From positions 3,658,001-3,722,000 of the forward strand of contig NW_026963315.1 in assembly GCF_036588685.1 (NCBI RefSeq): DNA of 64,000 nucleotides. Direction: 5' to 3'. How positions within the stretch are numbered: the stretch's first letter is position 1; every line of letters starts with the position of its first letter. The position numbers and the translations under genes were made by a program. The notes beneath the pieces were generated by a model. That model was not told the origin of the DNA. It did not search any database and saw nothing but the letters and a program-made list of their open reading frames with translations. This DNA is from Mytilus trossulus (Eukaryota). Of the stretch, positions 1-32,005 are shown one piece after another.

Positions 1-199
1 CTGTTTTTGTTTTGTTTATTTTTGTGTGTTTCAAAATAACACAATACCTAAATGAAGAAAGGTATACTATTTATACTTTTTAAAATGATGAATAAACAGT
101 TTTTGCAATTTACTTTTAGTCAACTGTTAGTGTTTCACTTTAAGAAAAAAAATAAAATGACAGATTTTGTAAACATTTTACAAAAGTCATAAAGATATC

Positions 200-800
200 T
201 ACATAACAATTGGGTCATCTTGACCTACATTTCATCCTTGAGTCACTTTGCTTTAGTTTTAGGTTCAGATCAATATCTACAATACTATACATCATATATC
301 AATAAAACTTCATCAGTAAGGGCATCTTACAGAGTAATGACTGAGTATACAAACAACAAATAGGTCACCTCAACTCAAATTTCAAACTTTATGTAACTTT
401 AGTCCAGTTTTTCAGTTGAGGTTTAAGCTACAACTATACTTCATACATGTATATCAATAAAACTTTATCAATATACCTAATTGATAAATTTCATCGATTA
501 ATGCAGGTCCAATAATAAATTTGGCAACCTTGATTTACATTTTATGCTTGAATGATTTTGGCTTAGGTCTATATCTCGGATACTATCCACATGTCAAACA
601 TATTCCATCAGTGAATACATCTCAAAGAGTAATACAGTCCTAATGAACAACTGGATCACCTTGACCTTCATTTACTCTTCTACGAGTCAATATCATTTTA
701 TGGTTATTTAATACCAAGGATGCTGTACATCATATACCAATACTACCTCATCTTGGAAAGTAATGAACACTCACACAACAATTGTTCAACTTTTATTTTT
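200..800. repeat. Degenerate ~130-160 bp tandem repeat upstream of the Helitron ORF
   Basis: Motif caa(t/a)tgg(g)tcaNcttgacct-like recurs at ~208, 358, 517, 648 and 778. Confidence 0.45.
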
Positions 801-1195
801 TCCATGTTTCACCAGTTTTGGTAAAGTTTAAGTTTAGGTTCTCATTACTGATCAGTATTATATAGCAAAACAAATATTTCTGTACTTAATACATTACTTT
901 TTATTAGTAAACATCAACACCACAAATAACTGTATCTTACTATTCGTTCTTTTGTAATATCAACACCAAATCATATTGTTAGATTGGGAACGGGGACAGG
1001 ATTACCTGCCATTACCTACTGTTCCATTTCTTTACATGTATATTATTTAAGTCTCCTTGCAGGACTCTGACAAACTTAGACATGCTTAGAACGACATTGT
1101 ACAGCCCTAATAGTTTATGAATTTCTTTTTTAAAAATTCTTCACTAAACATAATTTTTTTGACATGTTATTTTATTACATTTTTTTTTTAGAAAA

Positions 1196-4100
1196 ATGCC
1201 AAGAAAACCTAAGTCAGCAGCTCATCAGGTCATGCTGAAAAAAAAGAGTAATAAACGTTCAGCCCAAACAACGACTACACAACCTGCATCTAAAAAGAGA
1301 AATCAATAGCATCAGTATCTTTAAATGACCTATACTGTGGAAAACTAACCTTGCCATCAATCGATGACATTGGCAAAATGGATAATGTTTGTAGTCACTG
1401 CTCAGCTCATATGTGGAAACATGAAATACACAAAGGTTCTCTTAATTTGAATGCAAAATTTTCTACTTGCTGTTCTCAGGGAAAAATAACTATTCCAGCT
1501 TTACTCACACCACCTGAAACACTAAAAACACTTCTAACTGAAAATACAACTCGAGCCAAGTACTTTAGACAAAATATACGAGCATTTAATTCCAGCTTGG
1601 CTTTTTCTTCTTTGGGTGTAAAAGAAGACATACTTAAATCAAGAGGTCCTTACACATTCCGCATTAGTGGCTCAGTATACCACAGAATTGGTCAGTTGTT
1701 TCCAGAACCAGGAAAAGCTCCAAAGTTTGCTCAGATTTATATTTATGACACTGATAATGAGTTAGCAAACAGATTGCTTTGGAATAGTGACTTAGATGAA
1801 GATATCCTTACTGATCTTCAAACAGTGATGCATGAATGCAACCCATTTGTTCATACCTTTAAGCATGCCGCTGATGTAATGAAAACAAATGAAAATTTTC
1901 AATTAATTTTAACGTCTGATACCACAAAGGACTCAAGACGCTACAATTTGCCAACTTCTTCTGAAATTTCAGTTATACTCCCTGGAACTAACACTACAGA
2001 ACCTTCGAAACGTGATATTGTTTTATACTGTAGATCCACTAATCACCCTGAAGGGCATAACATAATTCATATCAATGAAACACACTCAAAATATGACTCT
2101 CTACATTATGTACTATTGTTTCCTTTCGGTGAAGATGGTTGGCATATTGATATCAAACACAATGACAATAAAAGGAAAGTTTCGGCAATGGAGTTCTATT
2201 CTTACCGCTTAATGCAAAGATCAGATTTTAATATTATATTGAAAAGTGGAAGGCTATTTCATCAATACATAGTTGATCAGTTTGCTAAAATTGAGCAAGA
2301 AAGACTTAACTATTGCCTTTATCATCAACATGAATTAAGATCTGAACTTTACCAAGGTCTCAGTGATGCTATAAACTCAGGTGATGTTGACGGTGCAACT
2401 GTTGGAAAAAAAATTATTCTGCCATCTTCATTTACTGGCAGTCCACGTTGTATGCATCAGTTTTACCAAGACGCTATGTCTATTGTAAGGAAGTTTGGAA
2501 AACCAGATGTCTTCATAACTTTCACATGCAATCCTAACTGGCCTGAAATTAAAAATGCTCTCTTGGGTAATCAAACACCTGCAGACCGTCTAGATCTCAC
2601 AGCACGTGTTTTCCATCTTAAGTTAAAGAACCTACTTAATGATATTGTCCAGCAACAAATATTTGGAAAAAACATTGGCACATGTATATATAGTTGAATT
2701 TCAAAAACGTGGATTACCCCATTCCCACATTCTTATAATATTACATCATGACAGCAAACCATTCACACCAGATGCATATGATGAATATGTATCAGCTGAA
2801 ATTCCTGATCCAAAATTGTTACCAGACTTGCACAAATTAGTTGTGTCCCATATGATACATGGACCATGTGGAGAAGCGAACAAGCATTCACCATGTATTG
2901 AGAATGGAAAATGTACTAAACAATTTCCAAAACAGTTTTATGAAAAAACATTCCAAACCACTGACGGTTATCCTAACTATAGACGCAGGGATAATGGAAC
3001 AACAATTGAAAAAAATGGAGCAATTGTAGACAATCGATGGGTAGTACCATATAATCCATACCTATTAGCAAAATTTGTAGCTCACATTAACGTTGAAATA
3101 TGTACAAGTATTACATCAGTAAAATATTTGTACAAATATGTGTACAAGGGACCTGATAGAGTCATGGCAGTAACTGAACAAGTCTGTACAAAAAATGATT
3201 CCAAAAATATTATCAATGAAATAACAAACTTTGTAGATGCTAGGTACATATCTGCATCTGAAGCAAGCTGGCGTATGTTTCATTACGAATTACATGACAG
3301 GTCACCAGCTATTCAACGTTTAGCCGTTCATCTTCCACACCAAGAAAATGTTGTTTATAAGGTCGGAAATGCAGTGCACACCTTAGAACATGCAAAAAAC
3401 ACTACACTTACTGCATGGTTTAACATAAACGCAGAGGACCCAAATGCAAGATCAGTGTTGTACCATCATTTCCCAGAACAATATACTTGGGACCCATCTA
3501 CATCCACATGGAAGCCTCGAAAAGCAGGAAATATGATTGGTAGGGTATACCAAGCAAATCCATCTGAAGGTGAACGCTTTTACCTAAGACTTCTCTTACA
3601 CCACATACCAGGGTGTAAATCGTTTGAAGATCTGCGAAGTTTAGATGATGGCACTATTTGTGACTCTTTCAAAGAGGCAGCACTCAAACGTGGCTTTTTA
3701 CAAGACGACCAAGAATGGATTGAATGTCTACAAGAAGCAACTTTATCTGCATCTCCTGCACACATAAGGTCACTTTTTGTTACAATTTTAATTTTCTGTG
3801 AGCCTTCAAATCACATAGTACTTTGGGAGAATTTCAAAGGTCCTATGTCTGACGATGTTAAATATAAAATGACAAATATCTGCGCGAACAACAATGAAGA
3901 TTCTGTAACTAATCGACTACTTACAGTTTTAGAAAGTCAACTCCGTATTCATGGAAAATCATTGTTTGATTTCCCAGGAATGCCACATCTAACCGAGGAA
4001 AATCCTTCAGATATGACATATGAACCAAACTTCTGCCCTGCTGAGCAAAAACAAATAGCTGACATGAATGTGTTGATGCTTAACACAGATCAACGTAAAG

Positions 4101-5488
4101 TTTTTCAAGCAATCCTGGATGCTGTCCAGACTGAAACTAAACAAAAAATATTCTTTGTTGATGGCCCTGGAGGATCAGGGAAGACCTTTTTATACAATAC
4201 TTTATTAGCACGTGTCCGATCGGAACATAGGGTTGCCCTGGCTGTGGCATCATCTGGCATTGCAGCCGAGTTATTGAGTGGAGGGAGGACAGCTCATTCC
4301 ACATTTAAAATACCTATCCCAATACTAGAAACAAGTACATGTAATATAAGCAAGCAAAGTATATTAGCAGAATCAATCCGTACCGCATCAATTATTATTT
4401 GGGACGAGGCTCCAATGGTCCATAAACATGTTATTGAGTGTGTTCACAGAACTTTCTGTGATATAATGGAATGTAATGATCCATTTGGAGGCAAAATTGT
4501 TATGTTAGGCGGTGACTTTAGACAGATTCTTCCGGTTATAAGGCATGGGAGGCAAGCCGACATTGTCGAAAGTAACCTAAAGAGGTCATTCTTATGGCAG
4601 AATATACAAACATTGCATTTAACTATCAATATGCGTGTTCGCACAAATAATTCATTTTCTGATGAAGCATTTGAAAAATTTCTTCTTCGTATAGGCAATG
4701 GAACACAGCAAATTTTGGATGATGGACAATCTACCATTGAGTTACCAAGATATATATGTATTGAGCCAAATAATAATGGACTCCAAAAATTGATAGATAG
4801 TGTATATCCAAATTTGAAAACGGTAGATCCTGATAATAGTTATTTGGGAAGAGCAATATTAACTACCAAAAATGAAAATGTGGACAAAATTAACACCTTA
4901 GTCATGGATCAATTTCCTGCTACACCATCAAACACCAAAATTTATCTCAGTGCTGATGCAGTTGCAGATGAAGACCAGCAAGGTCATTATCCAACTGAAT
5001 TTCTGAATTCGTTAACACCGTCTGGAACACCTCCACACAAATTGTACTTAAAGAAAAAAGCGCCCATAATACTTTTGCGCAATTTAAATCCTACAGAGGG
5101 ATTACTTAATGGAACACGACTATGTGTGCTTAACTTAGGCACCAGAATTATAGAGGCTAAAATTCTAACTGGACAACATTCTGGCAATACTGTATTTTTA
5201 CCAAGGATTACAATCATTCCATCAGATCCTGGACTTCCCTTTGACCTAAAACGCCGACAATTTCCTATTAGACCAGCCTTTGGAATTACAATTAATAAGT
5301 CTCAGGGACAAACATTAGATCATATTGGTTTAGACCTCACAGAGCCAGTTTTCTCACATGGACAATTATATGTAGCCCTATCTAGAGTCCGCTCTTTTCG
5401 TTCATTAACAATACTTCCTAACAAAGATTTCTTCGTCAATGAGAAATACACAACACAAAATATAGTGTACAAGGAAGTTTTAAATTAA
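1196..5488 (+). CDS. Helitron Rep/Helicase (HUH replication initiator + PIF1-family helicase), split by two 1-nt frameshifts (~1300 and 2667-2672)
   Basis: Cys-rich N-terminus (CSHC...CCSQGK); Rep motifs FITFTCNPNWPEI, VEFQKRGLPHSHIL and YLYKYVYKG; helicase motifs DGPGGSGKT, IIWDEAPM, GGDFRQILPV, TINKSQGQTL and HGQLYVALSRV. GLPH rather than GSPH indicates a canonical Helitron, not a Helentron. ATG 1196 follows a polypyrimidine-AG acceptor and encodes a basic NLS-like leader MPRKPK...KKR. Confidence 0.93.
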
Positions 5489-5622
5489 ACTTCAGACTAT
5501 TCTTTGTTTAAATAATGTAACATATATTTGCCATCTTTCTATACCTCCACCAGTGAACCGGCCATATATAATATTTTACATATCCGTCCGTCCGTCTGTA
5601 CCATTTGTAGGTTTAAACAACT

Positions 5623-5653
<31 letters not shown>

Positions 5654-5659
<6 letters not shown>

Positions 5660-5975
5660 AAGATGTGGTGTATTTGCCAACGAGACAACTCTTCACAACA
5701 GACCAAATTACACAGAAATTAACAATTATAGGTCACCGTACGGCCTTCAACAGTAAGCAAAGCCCATACCGCATTGTAAGCTATTAAAGGTCCCAAAATG
5801 ACATGTAAAACAATTCAAACGAGAAAATTGACGGCCTAATTCACGTACAAAAAATGAACGAAAACCAAATATGTATATATTATAACACAGCAACAAAAGA
5901 TAACCACTGAATTGCAGGCTCCTGACTTGGGACAGGCACATATAAATATAATGTGGCGGGGTTAAACATGCAAGT
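5654..5975 (+). repeat. Dispersed repeat family A (aaagaagatgtgg...ggctcctgacttgggacaggc...ggggttaaacatg)
   Basis: Homologous reverse-strand copies at ~24872-25015, 45380-45643, 48850-49227 and 59873-60313; head-only copies at ~12975-13058 and 26897-26981. This copy follows a (TA)n tract at 5625-5655. Confidence 0.8.
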
Positions 5976-6504
5976 TAGCAGGATTATGTATTGAAGTGAA
6001 ATTTCTAACACAAATTTAATGTACTGTCTCTCTGTAGTGTTTGTTGTTGTGCACCACGGTTTCTTTTTTTTTCTCACTTGGATGTCTATGGCAGTGCTTA
6101 TTTATGACATCTGCAACTCCGCACTTCCCATTCTATCTTATACAACAGACTTTTCTTTTTTTACATCTAAACTGTTTGTGCACTATCACATTTGATCTGT
6201 AGGGTAGGTTGCAGGGTTATTAGATAACTTTTTTTTGTCATACACAGTATGGAACAATCTGATCAAATAAAAATAGTAATAGTTCAGAGCAAGTTCCAGA
6301 TTTAGAGATTTGATATTCCGGGATTGACAAGACATTTCAAATTGCGCATTGTATAATCATTAAAACACCCTGGAGAATATACACACTTAATTCTTTCAGA
6401 ACAATCAATTTCACTACATCCAAAATATTCATTCAAATTAACACAATCAATCGCCAATAACACTGCACAATCACGGGTTTTTACTAGTATATATATATAT
6501 ATAT

Positions 6505-8968
6505 ATAAGTACGTCTGAGTCAGTGACAACTCTACAACAGATGTATCCATCGGATCGCCATCAATGATGGTGATACATGGCTGTGTACATAATGTATATA
6601 CAACTCGTCTAAACATCAACCCAACAATGTTAGATCTGTAAATTTGCTTCCGCAAATTTTTGGTTCTTCCCTCGCCGGGATTCGAACCCATGCTACTGTG
6701 CTATCGTGACACCAAATCGCCTACACTGCAGCCGTCCCGCTAGACCACACGACCACCTGGGCTCTCATAAAAGAGCTTTCGCTGGCCGTGTGTTACCTTT
6801 CTTCGTCAGTTTTAGTCTAGCGGCGTACTACAGTACATGATATATAAGGCATGAAGATGTTATTGTTACAGATCAGCTAAATTATCTATAGTAAAGGATC
6901 CTACAAATTAATGTAATATACAGTCACAGAAAATAATTATATTTATAAGTACGTCTGAGTCAGTGACAACTCTACAACAGATGTATCCATCGGATCGCCA
7001 TCAATGATGGTGATACATGGCTGTGTACATAATGTATATACAACTCGTCTAAACATCAACCCAACAATGTTAGATCTGTAAGTTTGCTTTCGCAAATTTT
7101 TGTTTCTTCCCTCGCCGGGATTCGAACCCATGCTACTGTGATATCGTGACACCAAATCGCCTGCACTGCAGTCGTCCCGCTAGACCACACGACCACCTGG
7201 GCTCTCATAAAAGAGCTCTCGCTGGCCGTGTGTTACCTTTCTTCGTCAGTTTTAATCTAGCGGCGTACTACAGTACATGATATATAAGGCATGAAGATGT
7301 TATTGTTACAGATCAGCTAAATTATCTATAGTAAAGGATCCTACAAATTAATGTAATATACAGTCACAGAAAATAATTATATTTATAAGTACGTCTGAGT
7401 CAGTGACAACTCTACAACAGATGTATCCATCGGATCGCCATCAATGATGGTGATACATGGCTGTGTACATAATGTATATACAACTCGTCTAAACATCAAC
7501 CCAACAATGTTAGATCTGTAAATTTGCTTTCGCAAATTTTTGGTTCTTCCCTCGCCGGGATTCGAACCCATGCTACTGTGCTATCGTGACACCAAATCGC
7601 CTGCACTGCAGACGTCCCGCTAGACGACACGACCACCTGGGCTCTCATAAAAGAGCTTTCGCTGGCCGTGTGTTACCTTTCTTCGTCAGTTTTAATCTAG
7701 CGGCGTACAACAGTACATGATATATAAGGCATGAAGATGTTATTGTTACAGATCAGCTAAATTATCTATAGTAAAGGATCCTACAAATTAATGTAATATA
7801 CAGTCACAGAAAATAATTATATTTATAAGTACGTCTGAGTCAGTGACAACTCTACAACAGATGTATCCATCGGATCGCCATCAATGATGGTGATACATGG
7901 CTGTGTACATAATGTATATACAACTCGTCTAAACATCAACCCAACAATGTTAGATCTGTAAATTTGCTTTCGCAAATTTTTGGTTCTTCCCTCGCCGGGA
8001 TTCGAACCCATGCTACTGTGATATCGTGACACCAAATCGCCTGCACTGCAGTCATCCAGCTAGACCACACGACCACCTGAGCTCTCATAAAAGAGCTCCC
8101 GCTGGCCGTGTGTTACCTTTCTTCGTCAGTTTTAATCTAGCGGCGTACTACAGTACATGATATATAAGGCATGAAGATGTTATTGTTACAGATCAGCTAA
8201 ATTATCTATAGTAAAGGATCCTACAAATTAATGTAATATACAGTCACAGAAAATAATTATATTTATAAGTACGTCTGAGTCAGTGACAACTCTACAACAG
8301 ATGTATCCATCAGATCGCCATCAATGATGGTGATACAGGGCTGTGTACATAATGTATATACAACTCGTCTAAACATCAACCCAACAATGTTAGATCTGTA
8401 AATTTGCTTTCGCAAATTTTTGGTTCTTCCCTCGCCGGGATTCGAACCCATGCTACTGTGATATCGTGACACCAAATCGCCTGCACTGCAGCCGTCCCGC
8501 TAGACGACACGACCACCTGGGCTCTCATAAAAGAGCTTGCGCTGGCCGTGTGTTACCTTTCTTCGTCAGTTTTAATCTAGCGGCGTACAACAGTACATGA
8601 TATATAAGGCATGAAGATGTTATTGTTACAGATCAGCTAAATTATCTATAGTAAAGGATCCTACAAATTAATGTAATATACAGTCACAGAAAATAATTAT
8701 ATTTATAAGTACGTCTGAGTCAGTGACAACTCTACAACAGATGTATCCATCGGATCGCCATCAATGATGGTGATACATGGCTGTGTACATAATGTATATA
8801 CAACTCGTCTAAACATCAACCCAACAATGTTAGATCTGTAAATTTGCTTTCGCAAATGTTTGGTTCTTCCCTCGCCGGGATTCGAACCCATGCTACTGTG
8901 ATATCGTGACACCAAATCGCCTGCACTGCAGCCGTCCCGCTAGACCACACGACCACCTGGGCTCTCAT
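6505..8968 (-). repeat. Left arm of palindromic array: ~5.6 tandem copies of a 440-bp tRNA-derived unit
   Basis: ataagtacgtctgagt starts units at 6505, 6945, 7385, 7825, 8265 and 8705 (exact 440 period); (TA)n at 6488-6506. Confidence 0.97.
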
Positions 8969-8969
8969 G

Positions 8970-10923
8970 GAAGAACACGGCCAGCAAAAGCTCTTTTATG
9001 AGAGCCCAGGTGGTCGTGTGGTCTAGCGGGACGGCTGCAGTGCAGGCGATTTGGTGTCACGATATCACAGTAGCATGGGTTCGAATCCCGGCGAGGGAAG
9101 AACCAAAAATTTGCGAAAGCAAATTTACAGATCTAACATTGTTGGGTTGATGTTTAGACGAGTTGTATATACATTATGTACACAGCCATGTATCACCATC
9201 ATTGATGGCGATCCGATGGATACATCTGTTGTAGAGTTGTCACTGACTCAGACGTACTTATAAATATAATTATTTTCTGTGACTGTATATTACATTAATT
9301 TGTAGGATCCTTTACTATAGATAATTTAGCTGATCTGTAACAATAACATCTTCATGCCTTATATATAATGTACTGTAGTACGCCGCTAGATTAAAACTGA
9401 CGAAGAAAGGTAACACACGACCAGCGGGAGCTCTTTTATGAGAGCTCAGGTGGTCGTGTGGTCTAGCTGGACGACTGCAGTGCAGGCGATTTGGTGTCAC
9501 GATATCACAGTATCATGGGTTCGAATCCCGGCGAGGGAAGAACCAAAAATTTGCGAAAGCAAATTTACAGATCTAACATTGTTGGGTTGATGTTTAGACG
9601 AGTTGTATATACATTATGTACACAGCCATGTATCACCATCATTGATGGCGATCCGATGGATACATCTGTTGTAGAGTTGTCACTGACTTAGACGTACTTA
9701 TAAATATTATTATTTTCTGTGACTGTATATTACATTAATTTGTAGGATCCTTTACTATAGATAATTTAGCTGATCTGTAACAATAACATCTTCATGCCTT
9801 ATATATCATGTACTGTTGTACGCCGCTAGATTAAAACTGACGAAGAAAGGTAACACACGGCCAGCGAGAGCTCTTTTATGAGAGCCCAGGTGGTCGTGTC
9901 GTCTAGCGGGACGTCTGCAGTGCAGGCGATTTGGTGTCACGATAGCACAGTAGCATGGGTTCGAATCCCGGCGAGGGAAGAACCAAAAATTTGCGAAAGC
10001 AAATTTACAGATCTAACATTGTTGGGTTGATGTTTAGACGAGTTGTATATACATTATGTACACAGCCATGTATCACCATCATTGATGGCGATCCGATGGA
10101 TACATCTGTTGTAGAGTTGTCACTGACTCAGACGTACTTATAAATATAATTATTTTCTGTGACTGTATATTACATTAATTTGTAGGATCCTTTACTATAG
10201 ATAATTTAGCTGATCTGTAACAATAACATCTTCATGCCTTATCTATCATGTACTGTATTACGCCGCTAGATTAAAACTGACGAAGAAAGGTAACACACGG
10301 CCAGCGAAGCTCTTTTATGAGAGCCCAGGTGGTCGTGTGGTCTAGCGGGACGACTGCAGTGCAGGCGATTTGGTGTCACGATATCACAGTAGCATGGGTT
10401 CGAATCCCGGCGAGGGAAGAAACAAAAAGTTGCGAAAGCAAACTTACAGATCTAACATTGTTGGGTTGATGTTTAGACGAGTTGTATATACATTATGTAC
10501 ACAGCCATGTATCACCATCATTGATGGCGATCCGATGGATACATCTGTTGTAGAGTTGTCACTGACTCAGACGTACTTATAAATATAATTATTTTCTGTG
10601 ACTGTATATTACATTCATTTGTAGGATCCTTTACTATAGATAATTTAGCTGATCTGTAACAATAACATCTTCATGCCTTATATATCATGTACTGTAGTAC
10701 GCCGCTAGACTAAAACTGACGAAGAAAGGTAACACACGGCCAGCGAAAGCTCTTTTATGAGAGCCCAGGTGGTCGTGTGGTCTAGCGGGACGGCTGCAGT
10801 GTAGGCGATTTGGTGTCACGATAGCACAGTAGCATGGGTTCGAATCCCGGCGAGGGAAGAACCAAAAATTTGCGAAAGCAAATTTACAGATCTAACATTG
10901 TTGGGTTGATGTTTAGACGAGTT
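8970..10923 (+). repeat. Right arm of palindromic array: ~4.4 inverted copies of the same 440-bp unit
   Basis: Reverse complement of the left-arm units; ends at gtttagacgagt followed by (TA)n (~10923-10944). Confidence 0.97.
9004..9276 (+). ncRNA. Predicted Pol III tRNA-derived (SINE-like) transcript, ~270 nt; representative copy, one cassette per array unit
   Basis: A-box-like TGGTCGTGTGG (9011), with a D-arm resembling tRNA-Leu TGGCCGAGTGGTCTAAGG; B box GGTTCGAATCC (~9078); first T4 terminator at 9273-9276. The acceptor stem does not pair well, so this is not a functional tRNA. Confidence 0.6.
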
Positions 10924-11158
10924 ATATATATATATATATATATATTTTAAAGTTTCAATGTTTTATGTGCGTTTAAGGTGGGTTTTTTTTATAAAGGGGG
11001 GATTATCAATCTCCCATTTACCAGAAGTGCAATCCTCTCAGTTCATTGCTCAAAATGAAAGTCTATATACAACATTATAATATACCATATGTTTTGCACC
11101 CAATATCATGTTAAGTCTCAAATTCTGCATTACAGAACAAAAGTTTCCATCAATTTAA

Positions 11159-11751
11159 GGTCATACGATACAGTTACAGGGAGGTAATCACGTTTCTAAC
11201 GTAAATTGTTATTTTCGCTACGTCTAACTATGACTTTTCGTGGAAAGATTCAGTTTTCGACTGATTTTTATCATTCAATCTTATTTAACTTGAAAAAGAG
11301 TTCATGGACCTCTCTTTTTTAAAATGTCATTTGGTTTGATTACGCGAGAAGATTATGTGTGCCAATTTTCATGAACTCGTAGATAGTGCATTTTTTTTTA
11401 TTTGATGAATATGCAGCAAAAAATTAGGTTTTTCCCTATATCTATGAGCATTTGATAAATATGAGTTATTTCTGAATCAAAAATGTATAATTTTTTAAAT
11501 ACAAATTATTTAAAGAAATCAATTTGTGTTTATCTTTTAAAACAAAAAAGTTATGTCTTTCTTTCGAAAGGGAAAATACGGCCACAAATCCGAATTTTGT
11601 GCAAATATACAAAATTTCGATCTCATTTTCCCAAAACGTAGCACATGAAGGTATATATTTTATTACATATTTAATTGAATCAGGTAAAAAATAGTCTATA
11701 ATGAAACTTTTATCAAAATGTAAATACGGGAACAAACTGTATCGTATGCCC
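11159..11751. mobile_element. Non-autonomous TIR element with TTAA TSD (Kolobok-like GG..CC ends)
   Basis: TTAA|GGTCATACGATACAGTT ... AACTGTATCGTATGCCC|TTAA; a second copy lies at 56996-57616. Confidence 0.88.
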
Positions 11752-12604
11752 TTAAAATAGCCGTTTATATTTTCCCCGTGAATTTATTTTTTGTTGTCTT
11801 ACACTGATATGAGATATGATTTTAAACATTAAATTTAAATGTTTTTATCAAATACTCATGTATTTAGGACGTTTCTTTTAACAGTATGCATGGTAGGGGA
11901 TCTATGATAGTTACCAGTCTATTATAATTTACTATTGTTAACTGTTTTATTAGCCTTACCTAAATGGCGCGTATAGTCTTACAATTATTGTCATATATCA
12001 TAACTTCCTTTAAAATTGCCTCGTTGCTCATTCATTATTTTGTGAACTCCTAGTTCTTGGAGTTTTCTGAGTTTTACATACTTTCTATTTTCTCCATTCC
12101 AAAATTTCTTGTTTATCTTGTTCACCCTTCCAATTTTATGATATGCTAGTATGTAACTGTTTTCATAAGAACTATTAATGGTATATGCACAAAAAATGTC
12201 ATAAGATGTTGGAACATTTTCGTGATTAATTCATCACCATATTGTCATCATATGCTTTCAGATATAAGTTTTAGTGTCACTATCAATAAAATACCATCCA
12301 GTTACGATGATCTTCTCAATTTTAAATACCATAATTACGATTTTCTTTTTTCCGAGTTAAGATTATCATCCCGATTTTTTCAACGGCAATTTTCAAAGCG
12401 CTTAGACAATTCCAGTGCACCGTGACGATTCAAATATGATGTAATGGTATAGAAAAACTTTTCAGCTGAGTAACTATTGACAAAACCATGCAACATTTGT
12501 GAAAAATGACCGTAAAGATTTTACCTATATCTGCCGTCGCCATATTGGGATAGTCGTAATTCAAGTTACGGTTAACACTTTAATACCAGTGACACTTGTC
12601 ACAG

Positions 12605-13541: not shown

Positions 13542-14951
13542 AAAAGGAAAACACTTATTTAGTACACACGTACGAGTATGCTTATCATGACATTGTTAGG
13601 ATTAGACTTGTGTATTTTTACTTTATTTATTTATATGTGTATGTTGTTGATTTATACGTGTAAATTGATAAAATATATAATTTAATTTATCCGGTGACTT
13701 ATACATGTAGTAATAAATTTAATTTGATTATTTGATCTTTGATATGGTATGCATTTTACAACAATATTTGTATGTCGCTGCTGGCCCTTTCCTTGTTCAT
13801 TCGTCTATGTAATTCTCTTTTTGTACTATGATAATTGGTTTATTAGTCTAAAGCTGTTACACTTACCTTATTGTTACAGCTTTCACAAACAAGGTACCCT
13901 GGTTTATTAATATATGTAAGAAAAAGGTGTCTGAAAGTTTTACTTTATAATTGTTAGTTAATTTATGTAGTTCTATAACAAGTAGAAAACAAGGTAAATA
14001 GGGTCAGCATGAAACATATTTGATTTTCTTGTGAAATACTATATAGATAGAAACAAGAACACGTCGAATAAGTAATACTAGTACATGTTATGTGCAGATT
14101 AAATCATAATTGTATATGTATTACTTTCCACTTCTTGCAGTATCTGCTTCAAAACGTTGACGAAAAAGCCGAATTTATATTTCTGTTTATAAAACAATAT
14201 GAATTTTACAGTGAGAAATCAAAGAATATTATAAAATAAAATAGGAACTGAGAATGTTCACTCAAAGAACCACTACTGTACAAAATGTGTAGGTGGATAA
14301 AAATTGAACATATATTCAAAATAATAATAAAAAACAAGTATTTAGGTGCCGAATTTCTATTTATGTAAAAAAGTAAAGTTAGGTAATCTAGTATATATGT
14401 CGTGATGACGTAATGAAAACACCTCCGTGCGTTTTATTGAAATATACATAGATTTTGCAAAACGGTTTTCACATGCAATATAAGTTGGCATGGGAAATTA
14501 ATCTTAAAGATTTCACTTGATCTTTTTCTGTGAGAGCAAACCTTCACAATTTTCAAGAGGCATTTGTTATTCCTTATATACAAGTTTAAGATTGTGTTCA
14601 AATGTAGACATTCGTTAATTTATCGATTTAAAATATCATAACCACAAAAAAAGTTGCGGTAATTGCATCAACCCAAAGTGGTGAGTCTCAAACGTTGCAA
14701 TGTAAATAAGAATCCGAAATTTGTGCGATTTTTGTACTAGTACTAGATTTTTGGACACATAGTTGGCTCAAATAAAACTTTTTTTTATTACAGATCAGCC
14801 ACTTCAATTTTATTCAAGGAACCAAAACATAAATTAGTGCTCTTAAATTCATATTTGAATCTATTCATTTTTCTTCTTAAGGTTGAACAAGAGGATTGCT
14901 GACGACAAAAAGACTTTTTTACATCATAAAAGCAATCTAGCTATTATAGAT

Positions 14952-16691
14952 ATGGCCGCAAACGAAAGTCCACAATTCTGTGACGTTTGTCTAAACAGAG
15001 ACCTCAATAAAACAGCGGAGGAATACTGTCAACAGTGTGAAGAGGTTCTATGTCGGGAATGTGGAGACCATCACAAAATATCGAGATCGTCAAAATCGCA
15101 TAAGACAATCACGGTAGAAAAATATAACAGATTACCATCCTTCATCAAGAAAATAAAACATAACTGTGAGGAACATGACTTCGTCCTTGAATTCTTTTGC
15201 AAATCTCATGACTCTCTTTGTTGCAAAATATGTTCGATAACAGCTCACAAAGCATGCAAGGAAATAATGTTTATAGAAGATATTCTTACGCCTTCAAAAG
15301 GACACCCATCAGTAGCTTTGGATAACATTGAAAAAGTTCTGAAAAATCTGGAAAGTAACATTTCTTCTGCTATAAAAGACAGAAACCGAAATTTGACCGA
15401 TTTACGAGAACAGAAGCGGGTGATCACAGAACAAATTAAAGAAAAGCGTCAAGAAATTAATAAACTGTTAGACAATTTTGAAAAGGCATTACTAGAAAAG
15501 GCATCTGCACTTGAGACAGAATACTGTCAAAAGACAGAGGAAGTAATTGCAAAATTGATAGAGGGAAAACAGAAAGTAGATGAAATTAAAAACGATGTCG
15601 AATCTGTAAAATCGTTTGCATCAAATTTACAAATCTTTATTGGATCAAAGTCATTCGAGGAAAGTGTCTCAACTAATGAACTCAACGTTCAAAAATTGTA
15701 TGATGATGGCAGCTTAAACAATGTGACAATGGAATGTACATTCAATGAAAAGCTAGAGCAGTTTATAAAAGAGATAAATGCATTCGGTGATATGAGGGTG
15801 GACAATAGTGAGAAGCATGTTTCTTTTCCATGGAAAAGTTATACATCAGCACAAATCTTTAAACCAATCTCGGGAGCAAAATCGGTTGAAAATATAAGTG
15901 TCAAAATTTTGCGTAAGATTAACATTGGTCGTAATGGGATTACTGGATGCGCCATGTCAGAATCTGGAAACATGTTATTCCTTGTTGCACACAAAAACAG
16001 TCTGATGAAATATTCATCTAATGGTGAATTTCAGTCCGAGTTGCATATCAACACTGCGCCGTCCAACATTGGATATGACCTTGCAGTGGTCGATTCCAAT
16101 ACGATAGCTGTTTCAACTGGTGGAAATAGTCCAAACCAAATTTATTTGATCGATATGAATAATGCAGAAATACGTCAAAATGTTGATTTAGAGACCTTCT
16201 GTTACGGTTTATGCTATCACAATGGATCACTTATATGCTGCACTTATGACAAAGGCATACAAATATTTGAAAATCAGAAAAATTTTACTAGAATGCTGGT
16301 ACTACCTACTGCAACTAAATCATTCGGCTATACCTACATTACCTCAAATGGAAATTCAATTTTTCATTCAAACTGTCGTAATAATTCTGTCGTATGTTAT
16401 GATTACAATGGACAAGTAAAATGGACATATTGCGATTCGTTGCTCAGAAAACCATACGGTATTACCGTAGATTCCTATTCCAACATTTATGTTGCTGGTT
16501 TTGAATCAAACAATATCGTAGTGATTTCGTCAGACGGAAAGCAGGCCAAAGAACTAATTGGAGCTAGTGACGGACTTTCAAAACCTCATGCCGTATTTGT
16601 CCATAAAACCAAAAACGTAATTCTTTGTGCTAATCATGATGGAGTTGCCTTTCTGTTTGACGTTTCATGCAGTAAACATTCTGCTGATTGA
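14952..16691 (+). CDS. RING-less TRIM-like protein 1 (B-box1, B-box2, coiled coil, NHL-like beta-propeller)
   Basis: CDVC..YCQQC...LCREC..HH..H; CEEH...FFCKSHDSLCCKIC...H; charged heptad region; propeller blades (KPYGITVDSYSNIYVAG). ATG 14952 is preferred to the ORF-track TTG because it aligns with the paralog starts; splice acceptor at 14881. Confidence 0.92.
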   Translation: MAANESPQFCDVCLNRDLNKTAEEYCQQCEEVLCRECGDHHKISRSSKSHKTITVEKYNRLPSFIKKIKHNCEEHDFVLEFFCKSHDSLCCKICSITAHKACKEIMFIEDILTPSKGHPSVALDNIEKVLKNLESNISSAIKDRNRNLTDLREQKRVITEQIKEKRQEINKLLDNFEKALLEKASALETEYCQKTEEVIAKLIEGKQKVDEIKNDVESVKSFASNLQIFIGSKSFEESVSTNELNVQKLYDDGSLNNVTMECTFNEKLEQFIKEINAFGDMRVDNSEKHVSFPWKSYTSAQIFKPISGAKSVENISVKILRKINIGRNGITGCAMSESGNMLFLVAHKNSLMKYSSNGEFQSELHINTAPSNIGYDLAVVDSNTIAVSTGGNSPNQIYLIDMNNAEIRQNVDLETFCYGLCYHNGSLICCTYDKGIQIFENQKNFTRMLVLPTATKSFGYTYITSNGNSIFHSNCRNNSVVCYDYNGQVKWTYCDSLLRKPYGITVDSYSNIYVAGFESNNIVVISSDGKQAKELIGASDGLSKPHAVFVHKTKNVILCANHDGVAFLFDVSCSKHSAD

Positions 16692-21352: not shown

Positions 21353-23077
21353 ATGGCAAACAACGAAAGTGCATCATTCTGCGTCATTTGCCAAAGCAGG
21401 GACCTTAATAAATTAGCGGAAGAATACTGCCCACAATGTGAAGAGGTTCTTTGTGGAGATTGTCAACATCACCATAAGACATCGAAGTCGACAAAATCAC
21501 ATCAAACCATCCCTATAGAGAATTATAAAAAATTACCATCCTTTATCAATCAAATTACCCATAATTGTAAGGAGCATGATTGCTTTCTTGAATTTTATTG
21601 TAAATCTCATGAATCTTTTTGTTGTAAAGTTTGTTTGATATCAGGCCACAAGGAATGCAAGGAAACTATTTTCATTGAAGATTTTCTTAAGCCATTACCT
21701 GGGCACCAGTCAGCAGCTTTAGATAATATTGAAAAAGTTCTGCAAGATTTGCAAAGTAACATCTGTTCCGCTATAAAGGACAGAAATCGAAATTTGACTG
21801 AATTACGCGAACAGAAGCGGGTAATTGAAGAACAAATTAAAGAAAAGCGTAAAGAAATCAATAACCTTTTAGACAATTTAGAAGAAGAATTATTACAAAA
21901 GGTATCTATACATGAAAAGACAAACTGTCGGGAAATAGAAGAAATAATTACGAAATTAGAGGACGAAAAAGAAAAAGTAGACGAAATTCAAAAAGAGGTT
22001 GAATCCGTCAAAATGTTTGCTTCTAATCTGCAAATCTTCATGGGAACAAAGACATTCCAAGAAAGTATTTCAACCAATGAAATCAACGTCCAACAAGTCT
22101 ATGACAACGGGAGCTTAAACAACGTCACAATGAAATGCACCTTTAGTGAAAAGCTAGAGGGGTTTATAAAACACATAAAAACATTTGGTGATGTAGAAAT
22201 TGATAATAGTGAAAAACATATTTCTTTTTCATGGAAAGGTGACAAATCAGCACAAAATTCCAAACCGATGTCTGTGGCAAAATCGATTGAAAATATATAC
22301 GTCCGGTTAGGAAGCAAGATTGATATAAATCATGACGGTATATCTGGATGTGCCATATCAGAAGCTGGAAACATGCTATTTCTACAAGCACATTGCAACA
22401 GAATGATGAAGTATGCGCCTAATGGTGAATTCATTTCAGAATCACGTATTAACCCGGAGGCAAACGGCATTGGGTATGACCTTGCAGTAATTAATTCTAA
22501 TACGGTAGCTGTATCAAGTGGTGGAAACTCCCCTCAACAGATTTACTTGATTGATATGAATAGTACAAAAATAAGTAAAGTTTTTCAACTTGGCGACTGG
22601 TGTTGCGGTTTAAGCTACAACAACAATTCATTTATTTGTTGCACGCATAGGAATGGCATAAAAATATTTGAAAGGTCGCACGATAATTTGACTAATGTCC
22701 GGATACTGCCTAATGCACCTGGAATTGCGGATTATACCTATGTTACCTCTAATGAAAATCGTATTTTTCATACCAATTGGCGTGATGATTCTGTCGTATG
22801 CTACGATTTTAGTGGGCAGGTGCAATGGAAATATTGCGATTCTACGTTACTAAGGAAACCGTACGGCATCACATTAGATTCTAATTCGAATATTTATGTT
22901 GCTTGTTCTAACTCGAACAATGTAGTCGTGATATCTCCAGATGGAAAACAGGCGAAAGAGCTAATTGGAGCAAGTGCCGGAATTACAAGTCCTCGAGCCA
23001 TTTTCTTTCATAAAACCAAACACGTACTTCTTGTTTCAAACTATAACAGAGCTGCTTTCATGTATGACGTTATATAA
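21353..23077 (+). CDS. RING-less TRIM-like protein 2 (B-box1, B-box2, coiled coil, beta-propeller)
   Basis: Intact 574-aa ORF colinear with gene 1; acceptor tttctgtag at 21269. Confidence 0.93.
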   Translation: MANNESASFCVICQSRDLNKLAEEYCPQCEEVLCGDCQHHHKTSKSTKSHQTIPIENYKKLPSFINQITHNCKEHDCFLEFYCKSHESFCCKVCLISGHKECKETIFIEDFLKPLPGHQSAALDNIEKVLQDLQSNICSAIKDRNRNLTELREQKRVIEEQIKEKRKEINNLLDNLEEELLQKVSIHEKTNCREIEEIITKLEDEKEKVDEIQKEVESVKMFASNLQIFMGTKTFQESISTNEINVQQVYDNGSLNNVTMKCTFSEKLEGFIKHIKTFGDVEIDNSEKHISFSWKGDKSAQNSKPMSVAKSIENIYVRLGSKIDINHDGISGCAISEAGNMLFLQAHCNRMMKYAPNGEFISESRINPEANGIGYDLAVINSNTVAVSSGGNSPQQIYLIDMNSTKISKVFQLGDWCCGLSYNNNSFICCTHRNGIKIFERSHDNLTNVRILPNAPGIADYTYVTSNENRIFHTNWRDDSVVCYDFSGQVQWKYCDSTLLRKPYGITLDSNSNIYVACSNSNNVVVISPDGKQAKELIGASAGITSPRAIFFHKTKHVLLVSNYNRAAFMYDVI

Positions 23078-30785: not shown

Positions 30786-32005
30786 AGTTTATGTATTTCG
30801 TTTGTTTTTACTAAGATGATTGATTTAATGGTCTAAAGATGTTACCATTACATTATTGTAACAGATTTCACAAACAAGGTACCCTGGTATATTAATATTT
30901 GTAAGAACATGGTGTCTTAAAGATACGTTTTACTTTATAATTGTTAGTTAGTTTATGTAGTTCTATGACAAGTAGAAAACAAGGTAAATAGGGCCAGCAT
31001 GAAACATATTTGATTTTCTTGTGAAATACTATATAGATAGAAACAAGAACACGTCGAATAAGTAATACTAGTACATGTAATGTGCAGATTAAATCATAAT
31101 TGTATATGTATTACTTTCCACTTCTTGCAGTATCTGCTTCAAAACGTTGACGAAAAAGCCGAATTTATATTTCTGTTTATAAAACAATATGCATTTTACA
31201 GTGAGAAATGAAAGAATATTACAAAATAAAATAGGAACTAAGAATGTTCACTCAAAGAAACACAACTGTACAAAATGTGTAGGTGAATAAATTTTGAACA
31301 TATAATGACCACTTGGTGTAAAAGTAAAAACTCAGTCCAAAACAAACAGATATAATTTTCGTTTATATTCAAAATAATAATAAAAAACAATGATTTAGGT
31401 GCCGAATTTCTATCTATGTAAAAAAGTAAAATTATGTTATCTAGTTTATATGTCATGATGACTTTATGAAAACACCTCCATGCGTTTTATTGAAATATAC
31501 ATAGATTTTGCAAAACGGTTTTCACACGCAATATAAGTTGGCATGGGAAATTAAACTTAAAGATGTCACTTGATCTTTTTCTGTGAGAGCAAACCTTCTC
31601 AATTTTCAAGAGGCATTTGTTATTCCCTATTCACAAGTTTAAGAATGTGTTCAAATGTAGACATTCATTAATTTATCGATTTAAAATATCTTCACCACAA
31701 AAAAAGTTGCGGTAACTGCATCAACCCAAAGTAGTGCGTCTCAAACGTTGCCATGTAAATCAGAATCCGAAATTTGTGCGATGTTTGTACTGGTAGTAGA
31801 TTTTTGGACACATAGTAGGCTCATATAAAACTTTTTTTTATTACAGATCAGCCTCTTCAGTTTCATTCAAGGAACCAAAACATAAATCAGTGCTCTTAAA
31901 TTCATATTTGAATATATTAATTTTTCTTCTTAAGGTTGAACAAGAGGATTGCTGACTATAACAAGTATTTTTAAAAACCATAAAAGCAATCTAGCTATGA
32001 TAGAT

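What the first reader, a model, noticed from the sequence alone, without database searches (positions are those of the whole stretch)
6488..10944. 4.4-kb palindrome of tandem tRNA-derived units with mirrored variant order, embedded in (TA)n
Seen: ~5.6 units of 440 bp face one way and ~4.4 the other, pivoting at ~8969. Diagnostic variants are mirrored. L1 (ctac, tttagtctag, ctatc) matches the outermost right unit; L2 (agtttg, tgtttc) the next; L3 (gacgtc, tagacgac, gtacaa) the next; L4 (ccagc, ctgagc, gctccc) the next. The order is L1-L2-L3-L4-L5-L6|R6-R4-R3-R2-R1, and L5 has no partner. The arms also carry private substitutions. Inference: the whole array was folded back once, or it is a foldback element whose TIRs are satellite-like arrays of Pol III cassettes and which targets (TA)n. 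I know of no named element that combines a SINE-like head, a tandem array and foldback architecture. This is the best candidate here for an undescribed system.
Basis: partly seen in the sequence, partly recalled or inferred. Interest (0 to 1): 0.8.

Follow-up and report, generated by a model that had tools for sequence, protein, structure and literature searches.

The report
Head-to-head repeat array in mussel DNA
The 4.4-kb mirror-image block of 440-base repeats is real and is one of many such blocks left by a short mobile repeat that lands in TA-repeat tracts, most likely copied in by a Penelope-like retroelement, so it records how those elements integrate rather than being a new kind of transposon.

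Summary
There are 5.6 units of 440 bp facing 4.4 inverted units, the turn is at 8969/8975, (TA)10 and (TA)11 lie outside, and the unit variants are mirrored (L1=R1 ... L4=R4, L5 unpaired).

It is not a one-off. The family has at least 2,699 + 549 (TA)n-bounded ends in this 1.3-Gb genome. About a quarter of multi-unit loci (8 of 29 on part of one contig) are head-to-head palindromes, each with its own pivot.

The ends are strongly polar: 2,699 against 18-55. They fall only at two unit sites preceded by T[TC]AGAC. A paralogous empty site shows that the target was a short (TA)n.

A Penelope-like element (RT + GIY-YIG) in the same genome has the same architecture: a 2.6-kb perfect head-to-head dimer between (TA)11 tracts, with a 3' end TTAGACACTTA(TA)n.

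Best reading: a non-autonomous, ribozyme-less tandem retroelement carrying A/B-box motifs, inserted by Penelope-type double priming or copy-back. The window's mirrored variants are private to this locus, so the arms were later copied onto each other, or both arms copy one heterogeneous RNA.

A foldback DNA transposon is not supported. Read support could not be obtained, and tRNA ancestry rests on motifs only.

The parts
1..6487 (+). 3' part of a large autonomous Helitron that abuts the left TA tract. It is a neighbour in the same ancestral (TA)n site, not part of the repeat family.
   Evidence: ORFs 1351-2697 and 2639-5488 match Helitron_like_N (E 3e-47) and PIF1 helicase (E 1e-73). The 3' terminus ...TTTTTACTAG at 6487 is shared by 3 of 3 other copies, each followed by T. 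The element runs upstream of the window.
6488..6507 (.). Left (TA)10 tract.
6506..8969 (-). Left arm: 5.6 units of 440 bp (L1-L6). The strand carrying the box A/B motifs is the minus strand. The outer end is at unit site b (…TCAGACGTACTTA|(TA)n read on the minus strand; GTCTGA at 6513-6518).
8970..8974 (.). Turn-around. The left arm stops at 8969 (q264), in the loop of the unit's own 5-bp inverted repeat GCTCT…AGAGC. The right arm is readable from 8975 (q286), possibly from 8971 with an 8-nt deletion.
   Evidence: reading of the sequence
8975..10933 (+). Right arm: 4.4 units (R5p, R4, R3, R2, R1p), with the box-sense strand on the plus strand. The outer end is at unit site a (TTAGAC at 10913-10918, then GAGTT|(TA)n).
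9020..9030 (+). Box-A-like motif TGGTCTAGCGG in one unit; it recurs every 440 bp.
   Evidence: Read. The consensus is recalled. No tRNA model hit.
9078..9088 (+). Box-B motif GGTTCGAATCC in one unit; it recurs every 440 bp.
   Evidence: Read. The consensus is recalled.
10923..10944 (.). Right (TA)11 tract.
10945..12140 (+). Right flank, colinear (84%) with the paralogous empty site L069, where it follows a short TA run directly.

Best explanation
The block is an old insertion product of an abundant, non-coding, 440-bp tandem-forming mobile repeat of this mussel genome.

How the family moves. Its copies have a defined 3' end on the strand that carries the Pol III-like A and B boxes. That end falls at one of two unit sites, T[TC]AGAC-N5-7 followed by TA-rich sequence. 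The 5' end is variable. The family inserts into (TA)n microsatellites. The most likely machinery is target-primed reverse transcription by a (TA)n-targeting Penelope-like element (PLE) with a matching 3' end.

How the palindrome forms. Head-to-head palindromes arise at integration, when both sides of the broken TA tract prime cDNA, or when the first cDNA is copied back. The two cDNAs are then joined at their 5'-truncated ends, often at short hairpins inside the unit.

This locus. The left arm was primed at site b and the right arm at site a. Both arms stop in the same part of a unit (q264 and q286-309). The units later diverged. The mirrored, locus-private variants mean one of two things: one arm was copied onto the other in situ (long-tract conversion or fold-back copying), or both arms were copied from one heterogeneous multimeric RNA whose source is not in this assembly. 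A Helitron later or earlier used the same TA tract.

Shown: the structure, its recurrence, the polarity of ends, the (TA)n target, the private mirrored variants, and a PLE with the same architecture.

Inferred: an RNA intermediate, the PLE as the driver, and formation at integration for this particular locus.
For: Recurrence:
- Own-genome search gave 251 matches at many loci.
- 11 head-to-head palindromes were read in detail, and all 11 have different pivots.
- On C1 between 1.26 and 22.9 Mb, 6 of 29 clusters are plus-then-minus by junction orientation. Two more were confirmed by sequence, giving 8 of 29. Only 1 of 29 is minus-then-plus.

Birth at or near insertion:
- In L031 and L032 there are 0 differences among all units, within and between arms.
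- L062 and L066 differ only in an A-run.

Polarity and end specificity:
- Site a as a 3'-polarity end has 2,699 exact matches. The opposite polarity has 18 exact matches, or 87 relaxed hits at about 55 places.
- Site b has 549 matches.
- A third TATATA site in the unit, without AGAC upstream, has 4.
- AGAC occurs only twice on the sense strand, 6-8 nt before sites a and b.

Variable 5' ends that also abut TA tracts.

Target: the empty-site paralog reads ...gaaagtataaaga(TA)5tttttaaagtttcaatg.

PLE parallel in the same genome:
- L072 has arms 1770-4364 and 4542-7136, 2,595 nt at 100% complementarity, with a 177-nt spacer and (TA)11 on both sides.
- Its ORF has RVT_1 plus a C-terminal GIY-YIG.
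- Its 3' end is TTAGACACTTA(TA)n, and one side has an 87-nt tail.
- That 3' end occurs 59 times in the genome.
- Fragments of its 3' end lie next to 440-family arrays in L016 and L017.
- Among the GIY-YIG hits I read 11 (-,+) close pairs against 1 (+,-) in the table.

Junction classes (thresholds chosen after seeing the data):
- 6 of 11 pivots are within 45 nt of symmetric (P 0.014). Three of these lie at unit-internal inverted repeats.
- The 4 asymmetric pivots all have the outer end of one arm contiguous (within 22 nt) with the pivot end of the other, as in twin priming (P 0.002).
- 8-9-nt inverted copies of the flank occur in L065 and L066.

Literature: PLE insertions show 5' truncation, partial tandems and an adjacent inverted 5'-truncated copy, and Naiads show a (TA)n preference (PMC8557442, passages).
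Against: - No RNA or expression evidence was obtained.
- Similarity to the PLE is only a 3' motif of about 11-13 nt. BLAST of the unit against 12 GIY-YIG loci, 7 PLE 3' regions and L072 found nothing longer.
- The unit has no hammerhead, twister or other Rfam ribozyme, unlike published non-LTR retrozymes.
- The one tandem Naiad-type insertion whose borders I mapped is not at (TA)n.
- In the window the unit variants are private to the locus. Formation at integration therefore needs an extra event (arm-to-arm copying) or an unseen heterogeneous source, plus a one-unit difference (L5).
- Young arrays are perfectly homogeneous, which a transcript of an ordinary genomic array does not obviously predict.
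- The pivot was not confirmed by reads. Only short Logan contigs were available, and no listed piece bridges 8969/8975.
Confidence: 0.6

Rival explanations
1. Late in-situ DNA fold-back. A single-orientation array sat in the (TA)n tract, its units diverged, and a replication or repair template switch then copied the array back. The turn was at the unit hairpin GCTCT…AGAGC and the rejoining used TATATA/(TA)n microhomology. One unit was lost afterwards.
For: - The mirrored unit variants exist nowhere else in the assembly.
- Shared variants (about 15) outnumber private ones (about 13), which fits divergence first and duplication later.
- The pivot lies in a unit-internal inverted repeat.
- (TA)n is self-complementary.
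- The right outer junction is TAACTCG rather than the usual TACAACTCG.
Against: - The same architecture occurs in arrays with zero divergence, so palindromes form when arrays are born.
- Both outer ends sit at the two family-wide 3' end sites, which a random fold-back would not predict.
- Pivot-type junctions are head-to-head at 11 of 11 loci, and clusters are 8:1 head-to-head against tail-to-tail.
- The mirror register is anchored at the outer ends, not at the pivot, so an extra unit deletion is needed.
Confidence: 0.2
2. DNA-based spread. Rolling-circle copies of an extrachromosomal 440-bp circle, or a Helitron-type rolling-circle process, are captured at breaks in fragile (TA)n tracts. Strand switching during rolling-circle synthesis gives the inverted arms.
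For: - Young arrays consist of identical units, up to 9 units with 0 differences. This suits copying of a single monomer.
- An autonomous Helitron sits in the same TA tract.
- Bivalve satellite-like arrays are known to travel with Helentrons (PMC7492417, abstract only).
Against: - Ends are 50-150-fold polar and restricted to two motif-preceded sites. Microhomology capture of DNA fragments would not give that.
- The family's ends lack the Helitron 5' TC and 3' CTRR-with-hairpin (hallmarks recalled).
- Flanks of 17 loci share no Helitron sequence next to the arrays.
Confidence: 0.08
3. A foldback-type DNA transposon whose terminal inverted repeats are arrays of the unit, moved as a whole by a transposase acting on the outer ends, with a TA target.
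For: - Long inverted arms made of tandem subrepeats.
- TA-rich target.
- Many palindromic loci.
Against: - 20 of 29 clusters are single-orientation.
- Pivots differ at 11 of 11 palindromes and arm lengths are unequal.
- Outer ends are a/a, a/b, b/a or b/b, and in the window they are offset by 96 nt.
- The second end of single arrays is variable.
- Nothing is enclosed at the pivot.
Confidence: 0.04
4. An assembly artefact: a fold-back chimeric long read, or a mis-join inside a repeat.
For: No read-level confirmation could be obtained. Only short contigs were available, and none listed bridges the pivot.
Against: - The two flanks are different unique sequences and are contiguous in a paralogous empty site. 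A fold-back read would instead give the reverse complement of the left flank.
- The arms differ at about 13 sites and by one unit.
- The same bounded architecture recurs at many loci and in a coding PLE.
Confidence: 0.04

Closest known systems
Insertion architecture of Penelope-like elements (PLEs; Craig et al. 2021, PMC8557442, passages read)
   Same: - Frequent 5' truncation.
- Partial tandems.
- An inverted 5'-truncated copy joined head-to-head.
- Insertion bias for microsatellites, (TA)n for Naiads.
- An occasional short extension at one end.
- I found a PLE (RT + GIY-YIG) in this genome as a perfect 2.6-kb head-to-head dimer between (TA)11 tracts.
   Different: - The 440-bp unit encodes nothing.
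- It shares only a short 3' motif with that PLE.
- It forms arrays of up to 20 or more units.
- It carries A/B-box-like motifs.
Non-LTR retrozymes of animals (Cervera & de la Peña 2020, PMC7229834, passages; Li et al. 2026 preprint 10.64898/2026.07.22.740005, abstract and passages)
   Same: - Non-coding units of a few hundred bp in tandem multimers, dispersed in thousands of copies.
- Present in Mytilus.
- Thought to be non-autonomous partners of PLEs.
   Different: - Retrozymes are defined by a hammerhead ribozyme in every unit and by circular RNAs. No ribozyme is detectable here.
- Mussel retrozyme units are given as about 350-390 bp.
- Circular RNA could not be tested.
Twin priming of LINE-1
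   Same: - The inverted 5' segment and the direct 3' segment are adjacent parts of one RNA.
- Four of 11 palindromes here (L062, L031, L015, L032) show that contiguity within 22 nt.
- About a fifth to a quarter of insertions are affected.
   Different: - The window itself and 6 other loci have near-symmetric pivots, so both arms cover the same part of the template.
- Priming here would be on TA tracts at internal motif sites of a multimer.
Tandem-like and palindromic SINE structures in bivalves (Martelossi et al. 2024, PMC11481361, passages read)
   Same: tRNA-related SINEs in bivalve genomes are reported in direct arrays and palindromes, mostly in the ark clam. A Mytilus species was surveyed.
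   Different: - Those are HCD-SINEs with LINE-derived tails and TSD-delimited copies.
- No (TA)n targeting, pivot analysis or PLE link is described in the passages I read.
- Their supplements and Dfam submissions could not be checked.
Foldback (FB) elements of Drosophila and similar TIR-array transposons (recalled)
   Same: Long inverted arms built from tandem subrepeats with little or nothing between them.
   Different: See the membership test. There are no fixed termini, no shared internal structure between loci, and most copies have a single orientation.

Membership tests
Foldback-type DNA transposon | Both outer termini are the same sequence in inverted orientation (TIR ends). | tested here: not met
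   In the window the left arm ends at unit q1 (site b) and the right arm at q97 (site a). Other loci show a/a, a/b, b/a and b/b ends.
Foldback-type DNA transposon | Copies at different loci share the element's internal structure and move as a unit. | tested here: not met
   Pivots differ at 11 of 11 palindromic loci. 20 of 29 clusters are single-orientation.
Foldback-type DNA transposon | Long inverted arms made of tandem subrepeats. | tested here: met
tRNA-derived SINE | A tRNA-related head recognisable by tRNA models. | tested here: not met
   ARAGORN finds 0 genes in the window. It gives a poor cloverleaf only at the 80% threshold. Rfam gives no tRNA hit at E<=1 on the region or at E<=10 on one unit.
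tRNA-derived SINE | Internal Pol III box A and box B. | tested here: inconclusive
   TGGTCTAGCGG is present (2 departures from the recalled consensus), and so is an exact GGTTCGAATCC, 46 nt apart. Several units of this array carry changes inside box A (columns 233 and 241). Transcription was not tested.
tRNA-derived SINE | A 5' end at the Pol III start just upstream of the head. | tested here: not met
   The 5' ends of 9 single arrays are scattered: q115, 163, 183, 233, 363, 389, 395, 415, 437. The unit has about 175 nt between its 5' boundary and the head.
Non-LTR retrozyme | A self-cleaving hammerhead ribozyme in each unit. | tested here: not met
   No ribozyme family hit in Rfam at E<=1 (5.5 kb) or at E<=10 (one unit). 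No CUGANGA core was seen on reading the unit.
Non-LTR retrozyme | Dispersed tandem multimers of a non-coding unit of 150-450 bp. | tested here: met
Non-LTR retrozyme | Expressed as circular RNA. | not testable with these tools
No RNA was laid.
PLE-dependent (PLE-type) insertion | 5' truncation, tandem copies and a head-to-head inverted copy. | tested here: met
   The same was found in a coding PLE of this genome.
PLE-dependent (PLE-type) insertion | Microsatellite target. | tested here: met
   The empty-site paralog has a short TA run. TA tracts lie at both ends of the loci read.
PLE-dependent (PLE-type) insertion | Sequence shared with the autonomous partner's terminus. | tested here: inconclusive
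   Only T[TC]AGAC-N(5-7)-(TA)n is shared with the PLE 3' end TTAGACACTTA(TA)n. There is no longer similarity.
Helitron / Helentron non-autonomous element | 5' TC and 3' CTRR termini with a subterminal hairpin, inserted between A and T. | tested here: not met
   The family's ends read (TA)n|ACAACTCG… and …GACGTACTTA|(TA)n. The neighbouring Helitron, by contrast, ends in CTAG|T. The hallmarks are recalled.
LINE-type twin priming product | The inverted and direct segments are contiguous parts of one template. | tested here: not met
   In the window the distances are 140 and 168 nt. It is met at 4 other loci.

The most novel reading that the evidence does not exclude
The 440-nt family is an undescribed class of Penelope-like-element parasite. 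It would be a ribozyme-free multimeric RNA carrying Pol III-box motifs, recognised through a minimal 3' signal, T[TC]AGAC-N5-7 followed by UA repeats, and integrated at (TA)n. Its thousands of insertions fall into three junction classes: symmetric joins at hairpins, twin-priming-like contiguous inversions, and copy-back into the flank. Together these would be a natural read-out of the still undefined PLE integration cycle. The perfectly homogeneous young arrays would come from rolling-circle or repeated-jump reverse transcription of a single unit.
Probability: 0.35. Interest if true: 0.7.

Novelty: new variant of a known kind. Interest (0 to 1): 0.55.

Why it matters
How Penelope-like elements integrate, and why they leave tandem and inverted copies, is an open question. 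PMC8557442 says so in the passages read.

This family is short, has a 440-bp ruler built in, and occurs thousands of times. Every pivot, 5' end and 3' end can therefore be placed to the base. That already separates two or three junction classes and points to a candidate 3' recognition motif that can be tested at the bench.

It also shows how dispersed short 'satellite' arrays and long perfect palindromes, which are potentially fragile and hairpin-forming, can be seeded at TA microsatellites in bivalve genomes. Both a Helitron and this element used the same TA tract here.

For genome annotation, it warns that these palindromes are likely real structures and not assembly errors.

Tried and rejected
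Read support. One runs search and one read-laying run gave only short Logan contigs. These cover the flanks up to 6478 and from 10956. They show the family at high depth in four organism codes, but no listed piece bridges the pivot, so the test is uninformative.

tRNA ancestry. ARAGORN at default settings, Rfam at two settings, and folding of the head (z -0.73) gave no support.

Ribozymes. None found.

Shared flanks. All-against-all comparison of the flanks of 17 loci plus the window found no common larger element. It found only a second tandem family (about 578 bp) next to five arrays.

Helitron carrier. Rejected for the family because of its termini, although a Helitron is the left neighbour here.

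Longer homology to PLEs. The unit was compared with 12 GIY-YIG loci, one full Naiad-type tandem, six further 3' regions and L072. Nothing longer than a short motif turned up. Two of the 12 GIY-YIG loci simply hold 440-family insertions.

One Naiad-type tandem insertion is not at (TA)n.

Empty site inside the window. Not found. It was found instead in a paralogue 155 kb away.

Classical twin priming for the window. Rejected, with distances of 140 and 168 nt.

Inverted copies of the flank. Absent in the window and in 7 other palindromes, present in 2.

Source array for the window's variants. Not found. These searched two diagnostic stretches only, with at most 1 mismatch.

Literature. Searches found no description of this family. 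Dfam, Repbase and paper supplements (Naiad consensus files of PMC8557442, SINE libraries of PMC11481361) could not be consulted, so the family may already be filed there.

Earlier notes of this scan name the species as a Mytilus. I did not test that.

Full report
1. The observation

The window holds two 440-bp arrays, 6498-8968 (5.6 copies) and 8975-10930 (4.4 copies). They are reverse complements of each other at 97-99%. They sit between (TA)10 (6488-6507) and (TA)11 (10923-10944).

I put all units in one register (q1 = window 6946) and aligned them. This gave 31 variable columns, and the unit-specific combinations are mirrored: L1=R1, L2=R2, L3=R3, L4=R4. L5 has no partner. Mirrored pairs differ at 2-5 sites, while other left/right full-unit pairs differ at 7-13.

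- The mirror register is anchored at the outer ends. The two innermost units are simply both consensus-like.
- The outer ends are not the same. The left arm ends at q1 and the right arm at q97.

The 'tRNA' label rests on a box-A-like motif and an exact box-B motif only. ARAGORN and the Rfam tRNA model do not recognise the segment, and its fold is unremarkable.

2. The family

The window lies on contig C40 of a 1.3-Gb assembly. Earlier notes of this scan call it a Mytilus (untested). The unit occurs at many loci, as short arrays, as long head-to-tail arrays and as other head-to-head blocks.

Reading the junctions showed one recurrent end, (TA)n followed by ACAACTCGTCTAAACATC (site a, q~84-97). 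A second recurrent end is (TA)n followed by AAGTACGTCTGAGTC (site b, q1). On the strand that carries the A and B boxes, both are 3' ends.

Exact-pattern counts over the genome:
- Site a as an end: 2,699.
- Site b as an end: 549.
- Intact internal junction at site a: 4,029.

So the typical insertion is one to a few units, often less than one. L034, for example, is a 326-nt solo copy between TA runs. The other end of single arrays is variable (q115 to q437 in nine loci) and also abuts TA tracts.

3. Polarity and end specificity

If TA microhomology alone made the ends, both polarities should occur. The opposite polarity at site a has 18 exact matches. With a relaxed pattern it has 87 hits at about 55 places. 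That compares with 2,699 for the usual polarity.

A third TATATA site in the unit, equally TA-rich, is an end only 4 times.

On the sense strand AGAC occurs exactly twice, 6-8 nt before sites a and b. The ends are therefore defined by a directional, sequence-aware process. This argues for priming at a 3' signal and against capture of DNA fragments.

4. The target

The left flank of the palindrome is the 3' end of a large autonomous Helitron.
- Its ORFs carry RepHel domains.
- Its terminus ...CTAG at 6487 is shared with 3 of 3 other copies, each followed by T.
- It extends more than 8 kb upstream.

A paralogue of the surrounding gene-array unit, 155 kb away (L069), is colinear with the DNA upstream of the Helitron and with the window's right flank. 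At the junction it reads ...gaaagtataaaga(TA)5tttttaaagtttcaatg.... The ancestral site was thus a short TA microsatellite. Both the Helitron and the whole palindrome lie inside it.

This also argues against an assembly fold-back. The two flanks are distinct and were once contiguous.

5. Palindromes are a regular product

I read 11 head-to-head loci in detail: the window, L008, L015, L031, L032, L033, L062, L063, L065, L066 and L067.
- All have their 3' ends outward and TA tracts outside.
- All have unequal arms and a different pivot.
- Outer ends are any combination of sites a and b.

On part of contig C1, 6 of 29 clusters are plus-then-minus by junction orientation. Two more proved to be so on sequence, giving 8 of 29. 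Only 1 of 29 is minus-then-plus, and that one shares a TA tract. One palindrome has 11 + 12 units.

In L031 and L032 all units are identical within and between arms. L062 and L066 differ only in an A-run. So the inverted layout exists from the birth of an array.

6. Junction classes

The thresholds here were chosen after seeing the data.
- Six of 11 pivots are within 45 nt of symmetric (chance P 0.014). Three of them sit in inverted repeats of the unit itself: GCTCT…AGAGC in the window, AAATTTGC…GCAAATTT in L008, and CCATCA…TGATGG in L063.
- The four clearly asymmetric pivots all show that the outer end of one arm continues, within 2-22 nt, into the pivot end of the other. This is the signature of twin priming, or of a plain inversion (P 0.002).
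- In L065 and L066 the 8-9 nt next to one TA tract are an inverted copy of the other flank, as if copying had run through the tail into the flank.

7. A coding element with the same habit

The literature describes exactly this set of traits for Penelope-like elements: 5' truncation, partial tandems, an adjacent inverted 5'-truncated copy, and a microsatellite bias, with (TA)n named for Naiads (PMC8557442, passages).

In this genome, GIY-YIG hits come in close (-,+) pairs 11 times and in (+,-) pairs once. This is my own reading of the table.

One such pair, L072, is a perfect head-to-head dimer.
- Its arms are 2,595 nt at 100% complementarity, with a 177-nt spacer.
- It belongs to an RT + C-terminal GIY-YIG element.
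- (TA)11 lies on both sides.
- Its 3' end is TTAGACACTTA(TA)n, and there is an 87-nt extension on one side.

That 3' end occurs 59 times in the genome. A 135-nt piece of it lies beside 440-family arrays in L016 and L017.

The 440 family's two ends, TTAGACGAGTTG(TA)n and TCAGACGTACTTA(TA)n, resemble it over 11-13 nt. No longer similarity exists.

I cannot tell whether it is the same locus.

Against a general rule, the one Naiad-type tandem whose borders I mapped is not at a TA tract.

8. What this means for the window

The unit variants of this array occur nowhere else.
- 17 other loci carry none of the combinations.
- The L2 combination is found only in L2 and R2, out of 36 near-matches.
- The L4 combination is found only in L4 and R4, 2 of 2.

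Hence the mirrored pattern arose here, or it came from a source that is not in the assembly. There are three possible routes:
- (a) The palindrome was born at insertion, like the young ones, and was later homogenised by a long arm-to-arm conversion.
- (b) Both arms were copied from one heterogeneous multimeric RNA, primed at site b on one side and at site a on the other. This would explain the outer-end register and why both arms stop at q264 and q286-309.
- (c) A single-orientation array was folded back late by a DNA template switch.

I cannot separate these routes. The family-wide pattern makes (a) or (b) more likely than (c).

9. Verdict

The (TA)n targeting and the 'copied arm' inference are supported. 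The foldback-transposon reading is not.

The best-supported mechanism is Penelope-type retrotransposition of a non-autonomous tandem repeat. The RNA step and the partner are inferred. The family lacks the ribozyme that defines the published retrozymes, and it has no recognisable tRNA.

I found no description of this family in four literature searches. I could not consult Dfam, Repbase or the supplements.

Noticed in passing
window 1-6487 (continues upstream to about L068:3720, i.e. C40:~3,653,720): A large (about 10.8 kb) autonomous-looking Helitron with RepHel ORFs and a 3' end CTAG|T. At least 3 other copies are 96-99% identical. It was inserted between A and T of the same ancestral TA run as the palindrome.
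   Followed up: partly
L055:2883-3366 (C40:3,656,883-3,657,366, inside that Helitron): A segment of about 480 bp inside the Helitron that elsewhere forms tandem arrays with a period of about 540 bp (for example C6:27,244,307-27,252,202 and C8:53,488,236-53,493,354). This is a Helitron-associated satellite of the kind reported for oysters.
   Followed up: no
L031:1-2485; also L014, L024, L025, L033: A second tandem family (period about 578 bp, no A/B boxes seen) lies directly beside 440-family arrays at five loci. In L031 it is itself turned head-to-head, with its pivot near 1866.
   Followed up: partly
L072:1754-7244 (C7:46,532,253-46,537,743): A perfect head-to-head dimer of an RT + GIY-YIG Penelope-like element between two (TA)11 tracts. 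The arms are 2,595 nt at 100% complementarity, with a 177-nt spacer that holds the start of the longer ORF and an 87-nt one-sided tail.
   Followed up: yes
L065:239-246 with 1707-1714; L066:210-218 with 951-959: The 8-9 nt flanking one TA tract are an exact inverted copy of the flank on the other side of the palindrome. This was seen in 2 of 10 palindromes checked.
   Followed up: partly
L035:442-1043 (C11:16,460,441-16,461,042): A scramble of five short 440-family fragments in both orientations, each separated by a TA tract, next to a GIY-YIG ORF. It looks like repeated insertion into the tails of earlier insertions.
   Followed up: no
window 5625-5656: An uninterrupted (TA)16 tract inside the Helitron, with no insertion in it.
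   Followed up: no
units at q261-267 (for example window 8966-8972 equivalents; L062, L063, L065): The A-run in CTCATAAAAGAGC varies in length between otherwise identical units and arms. It is either a hypermutable homopolymer or a consensus error.
   Followed up: no
window 14883-16691, 21353-23077, 31949-33724, 50937-52649: A tandem array of B-box (TRIM-like) ORFs, with paralogous units also on C13 and elsewhere on C40. These paralogues supplied the empty site.
   Followed up: partly
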